DNA of 64,000 bases, from the NCBI RefSeq assembly GCF_032062105.1, contig NW_026928959.1, forward strand, positions 124,001-188,000, written 5' to 3'. This stretch comes from Saccostrea cucullata (lineage: Eukaryota). The position numbers and the translations under genes are program-made. Below, one piece after another: positions 9,968-46,200 of this stretch. The notes beneath the pieces were generated by a model. The model did not search any database and was not told the DNA's origin. It saw only the letters and a program-made list of their open reading frames with translations. The stretch's first letter is position 1. Every line of letters starts with the position of its first letter.

Positions 9968-12900
9968 GATTTTCCCCATTTTGGCCCCATCCTTGCCCCG
10001 GGGGTCATGACTTGAACAAACTTGAATCTACACTACCTGAGGATGATTCCACATGAGTTTCATCTTTCCTGGCCCAGTGGTTCTGGAGAAAAAGATTTTT
10101 AAAGTGTGGACCCTTGGATGATTTGGAAAACTATAATGCTTCCACATGAGTTTCATCTTTCATAGCACAGTGGTTCTGGAGAAGAAAATTTTTAAAATAT
10201 ATATTCCTGTAGTCGGCCATTTTGGCCCCACCCTTGCCCCGGAGGTCATGATTTGAACAAACTTGAATCTACACTACCTGAGGATGATTCCACATGAGTT
10301 TCATCTTTCCTGGCCCAGTTGTTCTGGAGAAGAAGATTTTTAAAGATTTTCCCTATATATTCCTATGTAAAAAGCCCCATCAAAAGAATCTACACTACCT
10401 GAGGATGCTTCCACATGAGTCACTAGCCCATTCTGGAGAAGAAAATTTTTAAAGATTTTTCCTATATATTCCTATGTAAAAAGTCGGCCATTTTGGGACT
10501 TGAACAAATGAGGATGATTCCACATGAGTTTCATCTTTCCTGGCCCAGTGGTTCTGGAGAAAAAGATTTTTAAAGATTTCCCCTATATATTCCTATGTAA
10601 AACTTTGGTCGGCCATTTTGGCCCCACCCTTTAAATACACTATACATGAGTTTCATCTTTCATGCACAGTGGTTCTGGAGAAGAAAATTTTTAAAGATTT
10701 TTCTTATATATTCCTAATTAATGATTTGAACAAACTTGAATCTACATTCTTATTTCTAATGATCTTTCCTGGCCCAGTTGTTCTGGAGAAGAAGATTTTT
10801 GATATTGAGGATGCTTCCACATGTTTCATCTCTCCTGACCCAGCGGTTCTGGAGAAGAAGATTTTTTAAAAAATTACAGATTGATCTCCCCTTTTTTCTT
10901 AAAATGACTGTGTTGAAATTGCAACGACGTCTTTGACAAATTAACTATCCTCTTGACTTCAAAGTTTAAATATACACTTGACTTTTAATGAACCACAAAC
11001 ATGACAAATATGAAATAAATCTTTTGTTTTACCTTTAATGACGATTGATTTTATGCAGTGTAGGCGGATCCACGGTGGAGGCGATGTCCCTGGCCATCGA
11101 GAACGCGGCTGTTGTGCTCGTTTGTATGTCACAGAAATACAAAGAAAGTCCTAACTGTAGATCAGGTAATTGTGTGTGTCACAGGTGAAAATAAGGTAAT
11201 TTTTATGTCACAAAATACAATAAATTAATTAATAATTAAAAAGGTGAACATCAGTTATAGTTCTGTATAAAGTAACAGGTGGGTCACAAAAATTAAATAT
11301 GTGTGTGTCGGAAAACTCTGTATATATGTTAAAAAATACAAGGAAAGTATATCACATAAATAAAAAAAAAAACTGTAGATCAAAACAGGTAATTGTATGT
11401 GTCACAAAATACAATAGAGTAATTCTGTCTCTCACAAAAATATAATTAAGGACCAGGTGAACGTCAGTTATAGTTCTGTATGTTACAACATACAATAAAG
11501 TAACAGGTGAAAATTAGGTAATTCAGTATGTCACAAAAATACAATAAAGTAACAGGTGAATATAAGGTAATTCTGTATGTCACAAAAATACAATAAAGGA
11601 CCAGGTGATCACTAGGTAATTCTAAACATCACAAAAATACAATTAAGTAACAGGTGAACATCAGGTAATTCTTTATGTCACAAAAATACAGTAAAGTAAA
11701 AGGGTGAACATCAGTTATAGTTCTGTATGTCACAAATATACAGTAATAAAAGTAACAGTTGAAAATTCGGTAATTCTGTATGTCACAAAAATTAGCAATC
11801 GCCACGCTCGACTTTGAAGTGAAAGTGCCAGCTATAGCCTCGTGTCAGCGGCAGGCGCTGGGAAAATTTTGTTTGTTAAACAATATACAATCAATCAATC
11901 AATCAATCAAAAATTGAATACAAAAGAGTGTCAGCTATAGCTATTTTTAGCACAGGGGCATGAAGGAGAGTTGGTATAAAAATTCCGTATGTCATAAAGG
12001 TTAAATTGGACAACATGCATAATTATGTTAAATTTTGACAATATATCGACAACGCGGCTCCAAGTTGTGAGAGATCGGAAAATCCAATTTCGAAATACTT
12101 TTTTTACTAAATGATAGTAATCAGCATGTATGTCAAAGTGTGATAAATATTCCTTATTAAAAGAATCATCTACACACATAAAAAAGAATAATCAATCAAA
12201 CCTTTATATCCATATTGGCATATTTTATTTGCTTCAGTATACAAATAATTCTACAAATTCAGTCAAGGGGATCCGAACCCCCCACCCCACCCCCTGTGGT
12301 TGGTAAGATTGATAAAGGTAAAATAATAAAAATTTGTATCTACATTAAATAACTCTAAAAGTTGCTTTAATAAAGAACAACAGAGTTTATGTATAAAGTA
12401 TTTTTTTTTAAAACATTATTTTTCTCGCCGTCAGAATTTTTATTAAAGCAACTTTCAGAGTGTAATGTTATCAATCCGGAAGACAAGCCCCTATGTATTC
12501 AGCATGTGTGAAAAATTTATGTGTCATTATCTGTGATAAATATTCCAAGAATACACACTTAATAAAGAATAATCCCAGACCTCTATATGCATATTTTATT
12601 TCTTACATTGTTGTAACATTTGTATACATTTAAGTGTGTCTAAAAATTTGAAGTGTGTGTTGATTTGTGTAATGTGTTTTTTTTTTTTTACATTTTAGAG
12701 GCGGATGATTGCTGTAACGTGTTTTATTTTAACATTTTAGAAGCAGAGTAAATTTACAAATTCTGGAAGTGTGTGTTGATTGCTGTGCTTTCTACATTTT
12801 AGAGGCGGAGTATGCGTACAAACTCCGGAAATGCGTGGTTCCCCTCCGACTTGAGCCTCGGTACGTTCCAGACGGGTGGCTAGGGTTAATAATAGGAACC

Positions 12901-43200: not shown

Positions 43201-46200
43201 ATTCAAAAGCGTCCATCATTCTGAAATTACTGGAATCATGAAACGTTGAACAAAGACTGTAAGACAATTAAAATAACATTCACTTTGAATGCAACTCTAG
43301 AAGAAAAATATTTTTGAAACATTTATTTGAATTAAAAACTTCAACTAAAAATACCAAATCAAAAATGAATAATTTTATATACAGTAGAATGAATATATAT
43401 ACGTTATAAAAAGGAATTATATTATAATGTAATTTATATACCTTAAAAAAATTTTTTATGGTGTTCTTGTTATAAATTTTAAGAATGCCCAAAACTTAAT
43501 GTACATGTAGATGTTGTTATTAAAGAGAGCAAATGTGTTTTGTAGAAGGAGAACTCACACAATGTCGGGGAACTGAAGAGAGAAATCGAGGACCTGAAAG
43601 AACGACTCAATATGGCGGCTGAGGAATATAAATCCCTGTACATCGAGAAAAAGAAATATCAGAAATCAGCCGAGAAATTACAGAAAAGTGAGTATTGATA
43701 ATAACATTAGTTGCATAAAACTCAGCATCTTAAAAAACAAGTAAGATTTAGTGTAAACCATGTCAAACAAACTGACACCGCAATAGCAGACACTCTTCAG
43801 ACATTTTGTTCATTATTTAACATCAGAATTAATTGTTCATTAATTTCCATCATAGGACTAGGATCAGGTCGTACCATAAATGTATCCCAGGGTTCCCTGC
43901 CTGAGGTTACCAGTGAGGTGCTGCAGACGAAGGAGGCTCCAGGTGAGAATGAATACGAAAACTTACATTCCATGATAGATAAACTACCTTCAGATTGCTT
44001 ACAGTCAATGATAGATAAATTACCTTTAGATAGCTGAAAAAATTGGAATAATTTATTTCAAATGAAAGACAAGTGAGAATTTCAGATGCTGAAAATTATC
44101 CATGATTCAAGATATAAAATCCTATTGTGTAACAGATTCTGTGTATTTTGTACAGGAGACAGTTCCTCCGTGTCTGATCCTAAGGAAGATACCGTCTCCC
44201 AGCTCCAGAGTGAACTAGACGACGTGTCTACAGAACTACAGAAAAGGAATGAGAAAAAGATTTTGTAACGCATATAAAAACCTGATAGTATTATATTGAA
44301 GTGTTCATTCTTATCAAATTGTGTACATGTTAAATTTCTGAATGTCAATAAACAGGTGACAGTTCCTCTGTCGTCTAAATTATGTAAACCTATAACTCAT
44401 CTTGTTAACGCTAGCATAGTAAGTGTTATTTTCTCCAAATTTAAAACAAGCCAAAGTAACACCTATTTTTAAGAAAGTGAACTAGACGAGTAATTATCGT
44501 ATTCTACCAACTGAATTGACAGAAAACATGTAGATACAAAATTTCACTAATAAGTTTAACCATTTGTAGCATGTCAAACTTCCCTTACAAAACTAACAGA
44601 AAGTTGGCTTATGCAATGGATCGTGGTCTAATCGGTATTACATTTATAGATTTTAGTAAAGCATTTGATTTGGTGAATCATGACATTCTTCTAGAGAAAT
44701 TAACCCATTACAAATTTGACCAAACAGCTATAAAGTGGATTAAATCATATCTTTACTAGGGTGTGTTGGAACATGTGTCTCCAAAGTTACCCGTCACAGC
44801 AGTGTTGGGTCAATAGCTTTTATTTTTATTATGTTTTACATGTAAACAATTAAAATGTGATATGTTTGCTGATGATGTTACTTTGTACTCTAATAATCAT
44901 AATACAAGAGAAGGAGACACTAAATTCAGATCTTTGTGAAATTGAGACATGGTGTCCAAAATCAAATGGTATTAAATGTAGATAAAAGAAATGTATGTTA
45001 ATGGGAGAAAATCAAAACTAGAAAATCCAAATTTACAACTTTATACCTCAGATAAAACAATTGAAATGGTTGAAACAGAAAAAATTCTTGGTGTACATAT
45101 TGATGAAAACGACATCGGTTTGTAAAACTTTGAATTATAAGTTATTTACTCTTCGAGGTAAAAAAGTATCATGGCAATGCTTATATTTTGTTCTATTAAC
45201 TATGCAATGGCATGCACTATTTAAATTGATTATTCTTGACGCAAGTCCTGATTCTTCATCTAAACCACTATTTGAGAAACTTGGATGGAAATTTAGTTGA
45301 TCTGTACAAATACATATTATTATACAAAATTTTGGAATATCTTCATAATTTATTTACACAACTTCCTATAACCTGCAATCTGAAACTAACCACGACAAAT
45401 GTACCAAATTTTCATACAAACTTTTCAAGACCTCTGAAACTACGTGTACTAAGCAATAATGACATAAAACAAAGTTCATATTTCCAAGTGTAATAAATAT
45501 TGTCACTATTTGAGCATATAATCGTCATATTTCTGTATTGTCATACACAACTGTTTATAATTTTTGGTATTCCTATTCTGTATATATGACATACTTGTAT
45601 CTTTTGTAATTGATTTACACCTGGGGAAAGTGCATGCATAACCATAAATAAAGTTTTATTATTATTATTATGCATGTAGAAAACATGTCCAAAATACCTT
45701 GTTTATTAAATATTTCATTGAAAATTAGGATGTATTATTGTTTATGCAGAGTTCCCTATCCATTGCAAATAGATCGATTTCTCTTAAGCTACCTCTTGAC
45801 AATTTTAGGTAGACATATGATCATTTTGTTTTACTCTGTGTTAGGTATCAATTCATTGTAATTTGCTCTGTATTAGGTATAAGTTCATTGTTTTACAATG
45901 TTTTACTGTGTATCAGGTACAAAAAGATGTACAATGAAGAAAAGGAGAGGTTGGAGGTCCTGAGGCGACATTTCCACGATTCAAAATGTTAATTTTTCGA
46001 GGTAAAGTATCAAAGTGTAATGCAGTCACATGACCTGATCTTGTATTTTATAAATTTAATGGAATCTTCTACACATCAGTGTAACCATGACAAATGTACC
46101 ATAAATTTGGTTAGCAGTATAAAATCATGTTTCTAAATACTGAAACTACATATACAAGGCTATAGTGTTACATTGTTAATGACATAAAACAAAGCTCATG

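What the first reader, a model, noticed from the sequence alone, without database searches (positions are those of the whole stretch)
11166..45916. Pervasive 'exon-edge echoes': at least 14 splice junctions in three genes are tandemly re-copied into the adjacent intron
Seen, donor side: 11166-11795, 30770-30914, 32470-32654, 38018-38470, 39107-39320, 40086-40430, 40672-41010, 42303-42610, 43070-43140. Seen, acceptor side: 12600-12802, 25447-25912, 30332-30425, 42670-42831, 45790-45916. Units (33-105 bp where periodic) are unrelated to each other but each straddles the exon/intron boundary. The functional exon is always at one end, and in several arrays copies decay with distance. Inference: either a duplication process focused on splice junctions, or a selective sieve in which only junction-spanning duplications leave the CDS intact. 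Either way it leaves many decoy splice sites and raw material for exon extension or intron gain. I cannot say whether this has been described systematically.
Basis: partly seen in the sequence, partly recalled or inferred. Interest (0 to 1): 0.8.

Follow-up and report, generated by a model that had tools for sequence, protein, structure and literature searches.

The report
Splice-junction echo repeats inside introns
In this invertebrate genome the end of an exon, together with its splice signal, has very often been copied several times in a row into the neighbouring intron; the cell still splices at the original site, so the copies are silent, but they occur far too often at splice junctions to be chance or simple tolerance.

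Summary
In two gene models that I could validate, 8 of 14 donors and 3 of 14 acceptors are followed or preceded by tandem copies of exon edge plus splice signal plus intron edge (z 7.6-31 against shuffles; every other junction z < 2.7). The models are GPDH (validated by Pfam) and a SKICH/zinc-finger autophagy-receptor gene (validated by RNA-seq). None of the intron-internal control probes found an array that was independent of a junction. If duplications fell uniformly, 10 of 10 arrays at junctions has P about 5e-8, so a selective sieve alone does not explain the pattern.

RNA-seq shows that the exon-proximal donor is the one used. The apparent decoy joints are read mis-assignments.

Genome-wide, pairs of the donor 9-mer CAGGTAAGT spaced 20-80 nt apart occur about 40 times more often than pairs of the reversed motif.

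Orthologous junctions in distant relatives show 0 of 24 echoes, so this is a property of this lineage.

The human F7 intron-7 VNTR is a single-locus precedent. I found no description of a genome-wide version. Other first-stage readers of this scan noted the same pattern on other pieces of this genome.

Mechanism (inferred): recurrent small tandem duplications focused on exon edges, tolerated at donors because the first donor wins. Selection for decoy donors is not excluded.

The parts
11122..11795 (+). Gene A (ARM/TIR-like): donor 11166|11167 (CAG|GTAATT) followed by about 12 decayed copies of a 49-bp unit made almost wholly of exon tail plus GTAATT
   Evidence: TRF 11419-11792, period 49 x 7.5; copies listed; probe z 9.0. 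The exon end is inferred from reading frame and GT only.
12641..12848 (+). Gene A: acceptor (first exon base 12803) with an older echo of intron tail plus exon head upstream
   Evidence: Local alignments at 75% over 65 nt plus two short perfect cores; probe z 9.4. No TRF row.
25402..26227 (-). GPDH: acceptor 25446 preceded by six further 73-bp copies (28 nt of intron tail with pyrimidine tract and AG, plus 45 nt of exon head) at 95-100% identity, then a 62-bp array that still holds the acceptor core
   Evidence: TRF 25402-25913 (73 x 7.0, 96%) and 25993-26227 (62 x 3.8); copies; probe z 27.8.
30300..30425 (-). GPDH: acceptor 30331 with two further 40-bp copies (TTACAG plus 31 nt of exon head) upstream in the intron
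   Evidence: TRF 30301-30425; z 25.4; exon validated by PF07479.
30739..30969 (-). GPDH: donor 30915 (AAG|GTATAA) with one 145-bp-period copy of exon tail plus donor (79%) and small 25-bp sub-repeats of the donor core
   Evidence: z 18.1.
32473..32701 (-). GPDH: donor 32655 (GTG|GTAAGT) with 2.4 further 70-bp copies (47 nt exon tail plus 23 nt intron) at 91-93%
   Evidence: TRF 32473-32710; z 25.8; exon validated by PF01210 positions 11-59, and the next exon starts at 59.
38004..38475 (+). Gene C (SKICH / coiled coil / zinc-finger autophagy receptor): donor 38017|38018 followed by about 12 copies of a 39/77-bp unit; ACAG|GTA is retained in most copies
   Evidence: TRF; RNA joint 38017 to 38969 in 3 raw-read runs and X3; z 7.6.
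39089..39320 (+). Gene C: donor 39106|39107 followed by six further 33-bp copies (18 nt exon plus 15 nt intron) at 83-97%
   Evidence: TRF 39089-39320; RNA joint 39106 to 39942; z 21.0; no array at the orthologous donor in L021/L022.
40046..40430 (+). Gene C: donor 40085|40086 followed by two 56-bp copies (40 nt exon plus 16 nt intron, 88-95%) and then an older 35-81-bp layer with the short core TTTACAAG|GTACGG. The arrays make up 345 of the 397 intron bases.
   Evidence: TRF rows 40046-40430; RNA joint 40085 to 40483; z 31.5; the ortholog intron is 226 nt without an array.
40624..41010 (+). Gene C: donor 40671|40672 followed by three decayed copies, period about 110 bp (81-83%)
   Evidence: RNA joint 40671 to 41457; z 12.1. 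Not reported by TRF.
42239..42610 (+). Gene C: donor 42302|42303 followed by two full 102-105-bp copies (64 nt exon plus 41 nt intron, 95-96%) and two partial copies
   Evidence: TRF 42239-42529; RNA joint 42302 to 42832; z 25.3.
42667..42831 (+). Gene C: acceptor 42832 preceded by one copy of intron tail plus 91 nt of exon head (95%) and a 20-bp mini-array of the intron tail
   Evidence: TRF 42772-42828; z 19.7.
42970..43164 (+). Gene C: donor 43005|43006 with one 104-bp-period copy (88%)
   Evidence: TRF 42970-43164; reads leave the DNA at 43005 and continue with the exon at 43546; z 28.1.
45790..45916 (+). Gene C: putative acceptor echo (32-bp unit, YAG|GTA core). Weak; exon not validated.
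   Evidence: TRF 45830-45891; z 4.3.

Best explanation
These are genuine minisatellites specific to this lineage. Each was born when a short stretch (33 to about 150 bp) spanning a splice junction was duplicated in tandem, and the same junctions were hit or re-expanded repeatedly.

On the donor side the spliceosome goes on using the first, exon-proximal GT. The copies therefore become silent intronic 'pseudo-sites' and simply lengthen the intron from its 5' end. On the acceptor side the last copy has to be chosen, which is a more fragile arrangement, and such arrays are rarer.

Arrays wholly inside introns are about 30-40 times rarer per base, so tolerance alone cannot produce the pattern. I commit to a mutational input focused on exon edges as the most likely driver. 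In this model, breaks or replication stalls near the junction are repaired by fill-in or slippage that yields small tandem duplications.

Shown: the arrays, their anchoring at real junctions, use of the first donor, the excess over intron interiors, the genome-wide donor signal, and the absence at orthologous junctions of relatives. Inferred: that the excess comes from mutation rather than selection, and the molecular route.
For: - Anatomy: every array starts in the real exon, and its unit contains exon edge, splice signal and intron edge.
- Real junctions: RNA joints and Pfam coordinates.
- Junction probes: 8/14 donors and 3/14 acceptors at z 7.6-31.5, all others below 2.7.
- Intron probes: of 180 intron-internal probes, all 43 positives lie in or beside those same arrays.
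- Uniform model: the expected junction share is 0.19, and 10/10 arrays at junctions gives P = 5e-8.
- Acceptors are enriched too, which decoy-donor selection does not predict.
- Layering: different unit phases at one junction (40086-40430; 25447-26227) point to repeated events.
- Genome-wide: CAGGTAAGT pairs occur 337 times against 7 at 20-50 nt spacing, and 336 against 8 at 51-80 nt. A shuffled 9-mer gives 12 and 1.
- L017, the one single-copy locus I could fetch from those hits, is an acyl-CoA-synthetase-like exon end with a 43-bp echo.
- Relatives: 0/24 junctions echo, Fisher P = 4e-4, and their introns are shorter.
- Small tandem duplications from break fill-in are an established mutation class (PMC8355091).
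- First-donor choice among identical donors has been shown experimentally in human F7 (PMC1557585).
Against: - No direct evidence of breaks, stalls or new mutations at junctions.
- Modest positive selection on copies that carry a donor could give the same excess in a species with a large population size.
- The donor-over-acceptor bias is not significant in this window alone (Fisher 0.12).
- The genome-wide acceptor test has low power: 119 against 50, with most of the 119 from one dispersed family.
- Small arrays that do not span a junction exist in the unvalidated 3' part of gene C (43962-44035, 44958-45016).
- Genome-wide counts are inflated by long arrays and multi-locus satellites. By my hand count the first 100 donor matches represent about 22 unit families at about 30 places, against 2 control places over the same range of contigs.
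- Only two genes have validated models.
- The relatives are distant (70-83% exon identity), and I do not know what species they are.
Confidence: 0.5

Rival explanations
1. Positive selection. Duplications arise uniformly, but copies that add extra 5' splice-site motifs just inside the intron are favoured, so donor-containing arrays fix and persist. The benefit could be extra U1 snRNP recruitment, which would strengthen exon recognition or suppress premature cleavage in AT-rich introns.
For: - The donor consensus is about 40-fold enriched in tandem pairs genome-wide, while an acceptor-like 9-mer is not.
- AG|GT is retained in most copies of the decayed arrays, for example 8 of 10 copies at 38018-38475.
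- An array with a donor-like core also sits at the orthologous first donor in a distant relative (L021 2355-2452, L022 1-92).
Against: - Acceptor-side echoes are also far above the intron-interior rate (3/14 against 0). They contain no donor.
- Donors with arrays are not visibly weaker than donors without.
- Relatives manage without arrays at the same junctions.
- Better retention of the exon-derived part of old copies is expected anyway, because the reference copy is constrained only in its exon part.
Confidence: 0.22
2. Exon-biased duplication plus sieve. Small tandem duplications start preferentially in exon DNA (GC-richer, nucleosome-bound, methylated). Those lying within exons are purged, and only those running over the exon edge survive.
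For: - Both exon edges are affected.
- The exon share of the units varies widely, 0.32-0.88.
- An in-frame 114-bp coding repeat occurs in a random locus, L011 5530-6044.
Against: - No in-exon tandem repeats occur in the validated exons here.
- Nothing tested here separates this from a process centred on the junction itself. It is a variant of the best explanation rather than a true alternative.
Confidence: 0.18
3. Pure sieve or chance. Ordinary minisatellites arise anywhere, and those seen at junctions are simply the ones that overlap exons harmlessly.
For: This genome carries many minisatellites: about 0.15 arrays per kb in 119 kb of random loci.
Against: - Junction space carries about 4.8 arrays per kb, against none in 7.6 kb of validated non-echo intron.
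- Binomial P = 5e-8.
- The donor 9-mer is enriched about 40-fold genome-wide.
Confidence: 0.04
4. Assembly artefact: false tandem copies created at the borders between conserved exons and divergent haplotype introns.
For: - The species is highly polymorphic (many variant sites).
- Some echoes have only two copies.
Against: - Copies are diverged (70-97%) and number up to 12 per array, which two haplotypes cannot produce.
- A contig of an independent RNA library (X3) lies on the intronic array at 38129-38272 with two units fewer.
- The same architecture recurs at hundreds of places.
Confidence: 0.02

Closest known systems
Human F7 intron 7 37-bp VNTR with 5' pseudo-sites (PMC1557585)
   Same: - The first unit of a minisatellite spans the exon-intron boundary.
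- The authentic donor is followed by identical or near-identical donors.
- Those donors stay silent because the most upstream one is selected.
   Different: - F7 is a single locus in a genome where this arrangement is exceptional.
- Here more than half of the donors of two ordinary genes carry such arrays.
- The donor consensus is about 40-fold enriched in tandem pairs across 1.17 Gb.
- Acceptor-side versions also exist.
Internal tandem repeats at exon-intron boundaries of human genes in segmental duplications (PMC2812944), with the 'introns from tandem arrays' work listed among its references (Zhuo et al. 2007; not read)
   Same: Tandem repeats that straddle exon-intron boundaries and carry splice signals.
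   Different: - There the repeats vary between young paralogs and create new introns or alternative splicing.
- Here they sit at old, conserved intron positions of single-copy housekeeping genes and appear silent.
Intron gain by tandem genomic duplication of an AGGT-containing exon segment (reviewed in PMC3443670; shown experimentally in PMC3265369)
   Same: A small tandem duplication supplies extra splice sites without changing the mRNA.
   Different: - In that model the duplicated segment is exonic and the new intron equals one unit.
- Here the unit already contains intron sequence, and the introns pre-exist in relatives.
- The effect here is intron lengthening, not intron birth.
Small tandem duplications from Pol alpha-primase fill-in at DNA breaks (PMC8355091)
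   Same: The size class (tens to about 100 bp) and the head-to-tail structure, with no foreign sequence.
   Different: That work describes a repair route, not a genomic target. No break at splice junctions has been shown here.

Membership tests
F7-type junction-spanning VNTR (minisatellite of 5' pseudo-sites) | The first repeat unit spans the exon-intron boundary | tested here: met
   Nine donor arrays start in the exon tail. Six of these exon ends are fixed by RNA reads: five by joints and 43005 by reads that continue in the next exon. Two are fixed by Pfam coordinates.
F7-type junction-spanning VNTR (minisatellite of 5' pseudo-sites) | Downstream units carry donor-consensus sequences | tested here: met
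   The junction context of each copy is listed. GT is kept in nearly all young copies.
F7-type junction-spanning VNTR (minisatellite of 5' pseudo-sites) | The pseudo-sites are silent and the most upstream donor is used | tested here: met
   The main joints start at 38017, 39106, 40085, 40671 and 42302. Joints from copies 2 and 3 have sides capped at the exon-tail length (38 or 62 nt), and their reads carry exon alleles, so they are mis-assigned exon reads. Low-level decoy use cannot be excluded.
F7-type junction-spanning VNTR (minisatellite of 5' pseudo-sites) | Copy number varies between individuals | tested here: inconclusive
   A single low-depth X3 contig skips 78 nt (two units) at 38173-38252. 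No DNA reads were laid.
Intron gain by tandem genomic duplication (AGGT model) | The intron is absent from relatives and equals one duplicated exonic unit | tested here: not met
   The introns are present at the same positions in L021-L025. The units include pre-existing intron sequence.
Dispersed satellite or transposon-borne tandem repeat | The unit is unrelated to the flanking exon and present at many loci | tested here: not met
   The units contain the adjacent exon edge. The exon 39942-40085 matches only itself and its local echo in the whole genome. True dispersed repeats in the window (166-bp and 32-bp units) are separate.

The most novel reading that the evidence does not exclude
This lineage has a mutational process aimed at the DNA of exon-intron junctions, perhaps coupled to co-transcriptional splicing. 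The process keeps producing small tandem duplications there. It would make introns grow from their ends, supply a large share of the genome's minisatellites, and feed variant exon ends back into genes by exchange between the exon and its echoes.
Probability: 0.35. Interest if true: 0.9.

Novelty: new variant of a known kind. Interest (0 to 1): 0.74.

Why it matters
If the pattern holds genome-wide against annotation, this species offers hundreds to thousands of natural experiments on how the spliceosome chooses among identical splice sites. Cases range from first-donor choice to a housekeeping gene with seven near-identical acceptors in a row.

It also offers a visible, ongoing mechanism of intron lengthening: 19% and 45% of the intron DNA of the two validated genes is echo material.

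A junction-targeted mutational process would be a new link between splicing and genome instability. A selective explanation would point to a function for intronic decoy donors.

On the practical side, these arrays will mislead gene predictors and RNA-seq aligners, as the false decoy joints show.

Tried and rejected
- Decoy splice-site use. The joints 40139/40195 to 40481, 42405 to 42830 and 42303 to 42681 first looked like decoy use. I rejected them because the shorter side never exceeds the exon-tail length of the unit, and the reads carry exon alleles (40053 A, 40114 C, 42861 G). They are exon reads placed on a better-matching echo copy.
- Random genome sampling. That sample holds too few genic arrays to be useful.
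- AAGGTAAGT pair count. It gave 324 against 41, but one 47-bp satellite spread over many contigs dominates it, so I do not use it as evidence.
- Column-conservation test for selection on decoy donors. My segmentation of the decayed arrays was too poor to trust.
- Independent assemblies of the same species. The exact-protein look-up found nothing, and records of this genome or close kin seem to be withheld. One relative's contig had no DNA available.
- Literature. Seven full-text searches found the F7 case and the intron-gain literature but nothing on a genome-wide pattern. Two key papers (Zhuo 2007; Gao and Lynch 2009) are not held.
- Spliced models.
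Full report
**What the window is.** The window is AT-rich (about 34% GC) and intron-rich, from a 1.17-Gb assembly of 23,869 contigs. The finding concerns three genes.
- Gene A lies on the + strand (7966-13640). Another first-stage note calls it an ARM/TIR gene. I did not test that name, and Pfam gave no hit on its exon at 12733-13110.
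- Gene B lies on the - strand and encodes NAD-dependent glycerol-3-phosphate dehydrogenase. Its exons match consecutive stretches of PF01210 (positions 11-59, 59-104, 114-151) and PF07479 (10-50, 53-89).
- Gene C lies on the + strand. It has a SKICH domain, a long coiled coil and an autophagy-receptor zinc finger (PF17751, PF18112).

**Exon ends.** I laid three raw-read RNA-seq runs and one contig set of the same species label on 37600-43300. The joints give these exons for gene C: to 38017, 38969-39106, 39942-40085, 40483-40671, 41457-41594, 42174-42302 and 42832-43005. After 43005 the reads continue with the exon at 43546. GPDH exon ends follow from open frames, GT/AG signals and the Pfam coordinates.

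**The observation.** Tandem Repeats Finder reports arrays at most of the claimed places. Local alignment of each junction unit shows that every array begins in the true exon. The copies hold the exon tail, the GT and the first intron bases on the donor side. On the acceptor side they hold the intron tail, the AG and the exon head. The units are unrelated to one another.

**Formal probe test.** I took a 50-nt probe across each of 28 validated junctions and searched the adjacent 600 nt of intron, with dinucleotide shuffles as the null. The result is bimodal.
- Donors with echoes: 8 of 14 (32655, 30915, 38017, 39106, 40085, 40671, 42302, 43005).
- Acceptors with echoes: 3 of 14 (30331, 25446, 42832).
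- These eleven score z 7.6-31.5. Every other junction scores below 2.7.
- Gene A's donor and acceptor score 9.0 and 9.4. The putative acceptor at 45916 scores only 4.3.

**More than chance, and more than a sieve.** The same test on 180 probes lying wholly inside the introns gave 43 positives. All of them fall inside or directly beside the junction arrays. None marks an independent intron-interior array.
- If duplications of the observed mean length fell uniformly and only those sparing the coding sequence survived, 19% should span a junction.
- Observing 10 of 10 has P = 5e-8.
- Junction space carries about 4.8 arrays per kb. The 7.6 kb of non-echo intron carries none. Random loci of the genome carry about 0.15 per kb.
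- Small two-copy arrays that do not span a junction do occur in the unvalidated 3' part of gene C (43962-44035, 44958-45016). The intron-interior rate is therefore low, not zero.
- Echo DNA makes up 19% of the intron bases of GPDH and 45% of those of gene C.

**Which site is used.** For five donors the main RNA joints start at the exon-proximal GT, and at 43005 the reads leave the DNA at the exon-proximal donor. Joints that seem to start at copy 2 or copy 3 have a shorter side that never exceeds the exon-tail part of the unit (38 nt for the 40-nt tail, 62 nt for the 64-nt tail). The reads on them carry the exon's own alleles. They are exon reads from other alleles that fit an echo copy slightly better. 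Depth over the array stretches of the introns is near zero. So I see no sound evidence of decoy use, although a low level cannot be excluded. This matches the rule shown experimentally for human F7 intron 7: among identical consecutive donors the most upstream one is chosen (PMC1557585).

**Genome-wide signal.** I counted pairs of a perfect donor 9-mer at minisatellite spacing in the whole assembly.

| Pattern | Spacing | Matches | Reversed-motif control |
|---|---|---|---|
| CAGGTAAGT pair | 20-50 nt | 337 | 7 |
| CAGGTAAGT pair | 51-80 nt | 336 | 8 |
| Shuffled 9-mer pair | 20-50 nt | 12 | 1 |
| AAGGTAAGT pair | 20-50 nt | 324 | 41 |
| Acceptor-like 9-mer pair | 20-50 nt | 119 | 50 |

- Long arrays inflate the match counts. 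By my hand count the first 100 donor matches are about 22 different units at about 30 places. The controls have two places each over the same range of contigs.
- L017, the only single-copy locus I could fetch from these hits, is an exon that reads like the C-terminal part of an acyl-CoA synthetase (not checked against Pfam). A 43-bp echo of its tail and donor follows it directly.
- The AAGGTAAGT count is uninformative because one 47-bp satellite swamps it.
- Most of the 119 acceptor-like matches come from one dispersed family, and that test has little power because acceptor signals are degenerate.
- Other first-stage readers of this scan noted the same pattern on at least eight other pieces of this genome. 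I treat those notes as leads only.

**Relatives.** Word searches with single exons found genomic contigs of the orthologous genes from other public samples: L021, L022, L023 and L024 for gene C and L025 for GPDH. Exon identity to the window is 70-83%.
- The introns sit at the same positions.
- The same probe test gives 0 of 13 donors and 0 of 11 acceptors with an echo. Against this genome that is Fisher P = 4e-4 for all junctions and 2e-3 for donors alone.
- Introns that carry arrays here are longer than their counterparts: 951 against 210 nt, 835 against 602, 397 against 226, 529 against 405 and 113, and 554 against 259.
- One exception: the first donor of the series is followed in L021 and L022 by a 17-38-bp array with an ACAG|GTAC core.
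- L024 keeps a 20-nt remnant of exon sequence right after the donor orthologous to 42302.
- The property belongs to this lineage. Some junctions may be recurrent targets.

**Mechanism.** What is shown: the arrays are real, anchored at used junctions, silent, in great excess over intron interiors, layered, and lineage-specific.

What is inferred: the excess reflects where duplications arise. Three points favour this.
- Acceptor edges are also enriched, although they carry no donor motif.
- The same junction shows units of different phase and age. At 40086-40430 a young 56-bp layer lies next to the exon and an older 35-81-bp layer lies beyond it. At 25447-26227 a young 73-bp layer lies next to the exon and a 62-bp layer beyond it.
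- Relatives do without the arrays.

A plausible route is a break or stall near the junction, repaired by fill-in or slippage. That route is known to give tandem duplications of this size (PMC8355091). The donor bias would then come from splicing tolerance. A duplicated donor is harmless because the first one wins. A duplicated acceptor needs the last copy to be chosen.

The bias is clear in gene C (6 of 7 donors against 1 of 7 acceptors) but not significant over both genes (Fisher 0.12).

Positive selection for extra donor motifs remains a serious rival. Modest selection in a large population could give the same excess.

**Comparison with what is known.** Each array is, by its features, an F7-type junction-spanning minisatellite. 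The arrays are not intron gains of the AGGT-duplication type, since the introns pre-exist. They are not dispersed satellites, since the units are copies of the adjacent exon edge. What I did not find described is the scale: most donors of ordinary genes, and a genome-wide donor signature. My literature search covered open-access full text only, and two relevant papers were not available.

**Limits.**
- Only two genes have validated models.
- My single read-laying run went to RNA, so the arrays are not confirmed by DNA reads. One independent RNA-library contig does lie on an intronic array with two units fewer.
- I could sample no further genome sequence after 119 kb.

Noticed in passing
window 31028-31268 against L025 1990-2010: The GPDH intron between the exons ending at 31269 and starting at 31027 is absent from a relative's gene, where the two exons run on without a break. 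This is an intron presence/absence difference between lineages.
   Followed up: no
window 39106, 40053, 42861: Exon variants seen in the RNA reads of other individuals (G/T, C/A, A/G) equal the base carried by the neighbouring echo copies. Either the echoes keep the older allele, or the exon and its echoes exchange sequence.
   Followed up: partly
window 25402-25913: A housekeeping gene (GPDH) has six intact decoy acceptors, each with its pyrimidine tract, directly upstream of the real one. They are 95-100% identical to the real acceptor and its first 45 exon bases. How the last one is chosen, or whether this allele is impaired, is unknown.
   Followed up: no
window 39510-39700: RNA reads pile up inside an intron of gene C (depth 7-13 in raw-read runs, about 550 in the contig run) with many loose ends at 39652-39694. 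It looks like a fragment of a repeated, transcribed element.
   Followed up: no
window 38966-39313 and 42168-42497: The 33-bp and 102/105-bp donor arrays are multiples of three and stay open in the exon's reading frame. Use of a decoy donor would add in-frame residues rather than truncate the protein.
   Followed up: no
window 19849-20710 and 23402-24215; also 10265-10716 and L017 1600-3050: A repeat of about 166 bp with a CCCCCGGGGG core occurs as two arrays in opposite orientation about 2.7 kb apart, and again next to the gene in L017. It is probably carried by a mobile element.
   Followed up: no
window 57989-61664: A large 32-bp satellite (more than 70 copies in three blocks) with strong G-over-C skew.
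   Followed up: no
G000 contigs C4451, C1272, C202, C5043 and others: A 47-bp satellite that contains a perfect AAGGTAAGT donor consensus fills many kilobases on several contigs.
   Followed up: no
L011 5530-6044: A 114-bp (38-codon) tandem repeat that reads as an open Lys/Glu-rich coding repeat on the minus strand. It is an in-frame, possibly exonic tandem duplication in a random locus.
   Followed up: partly
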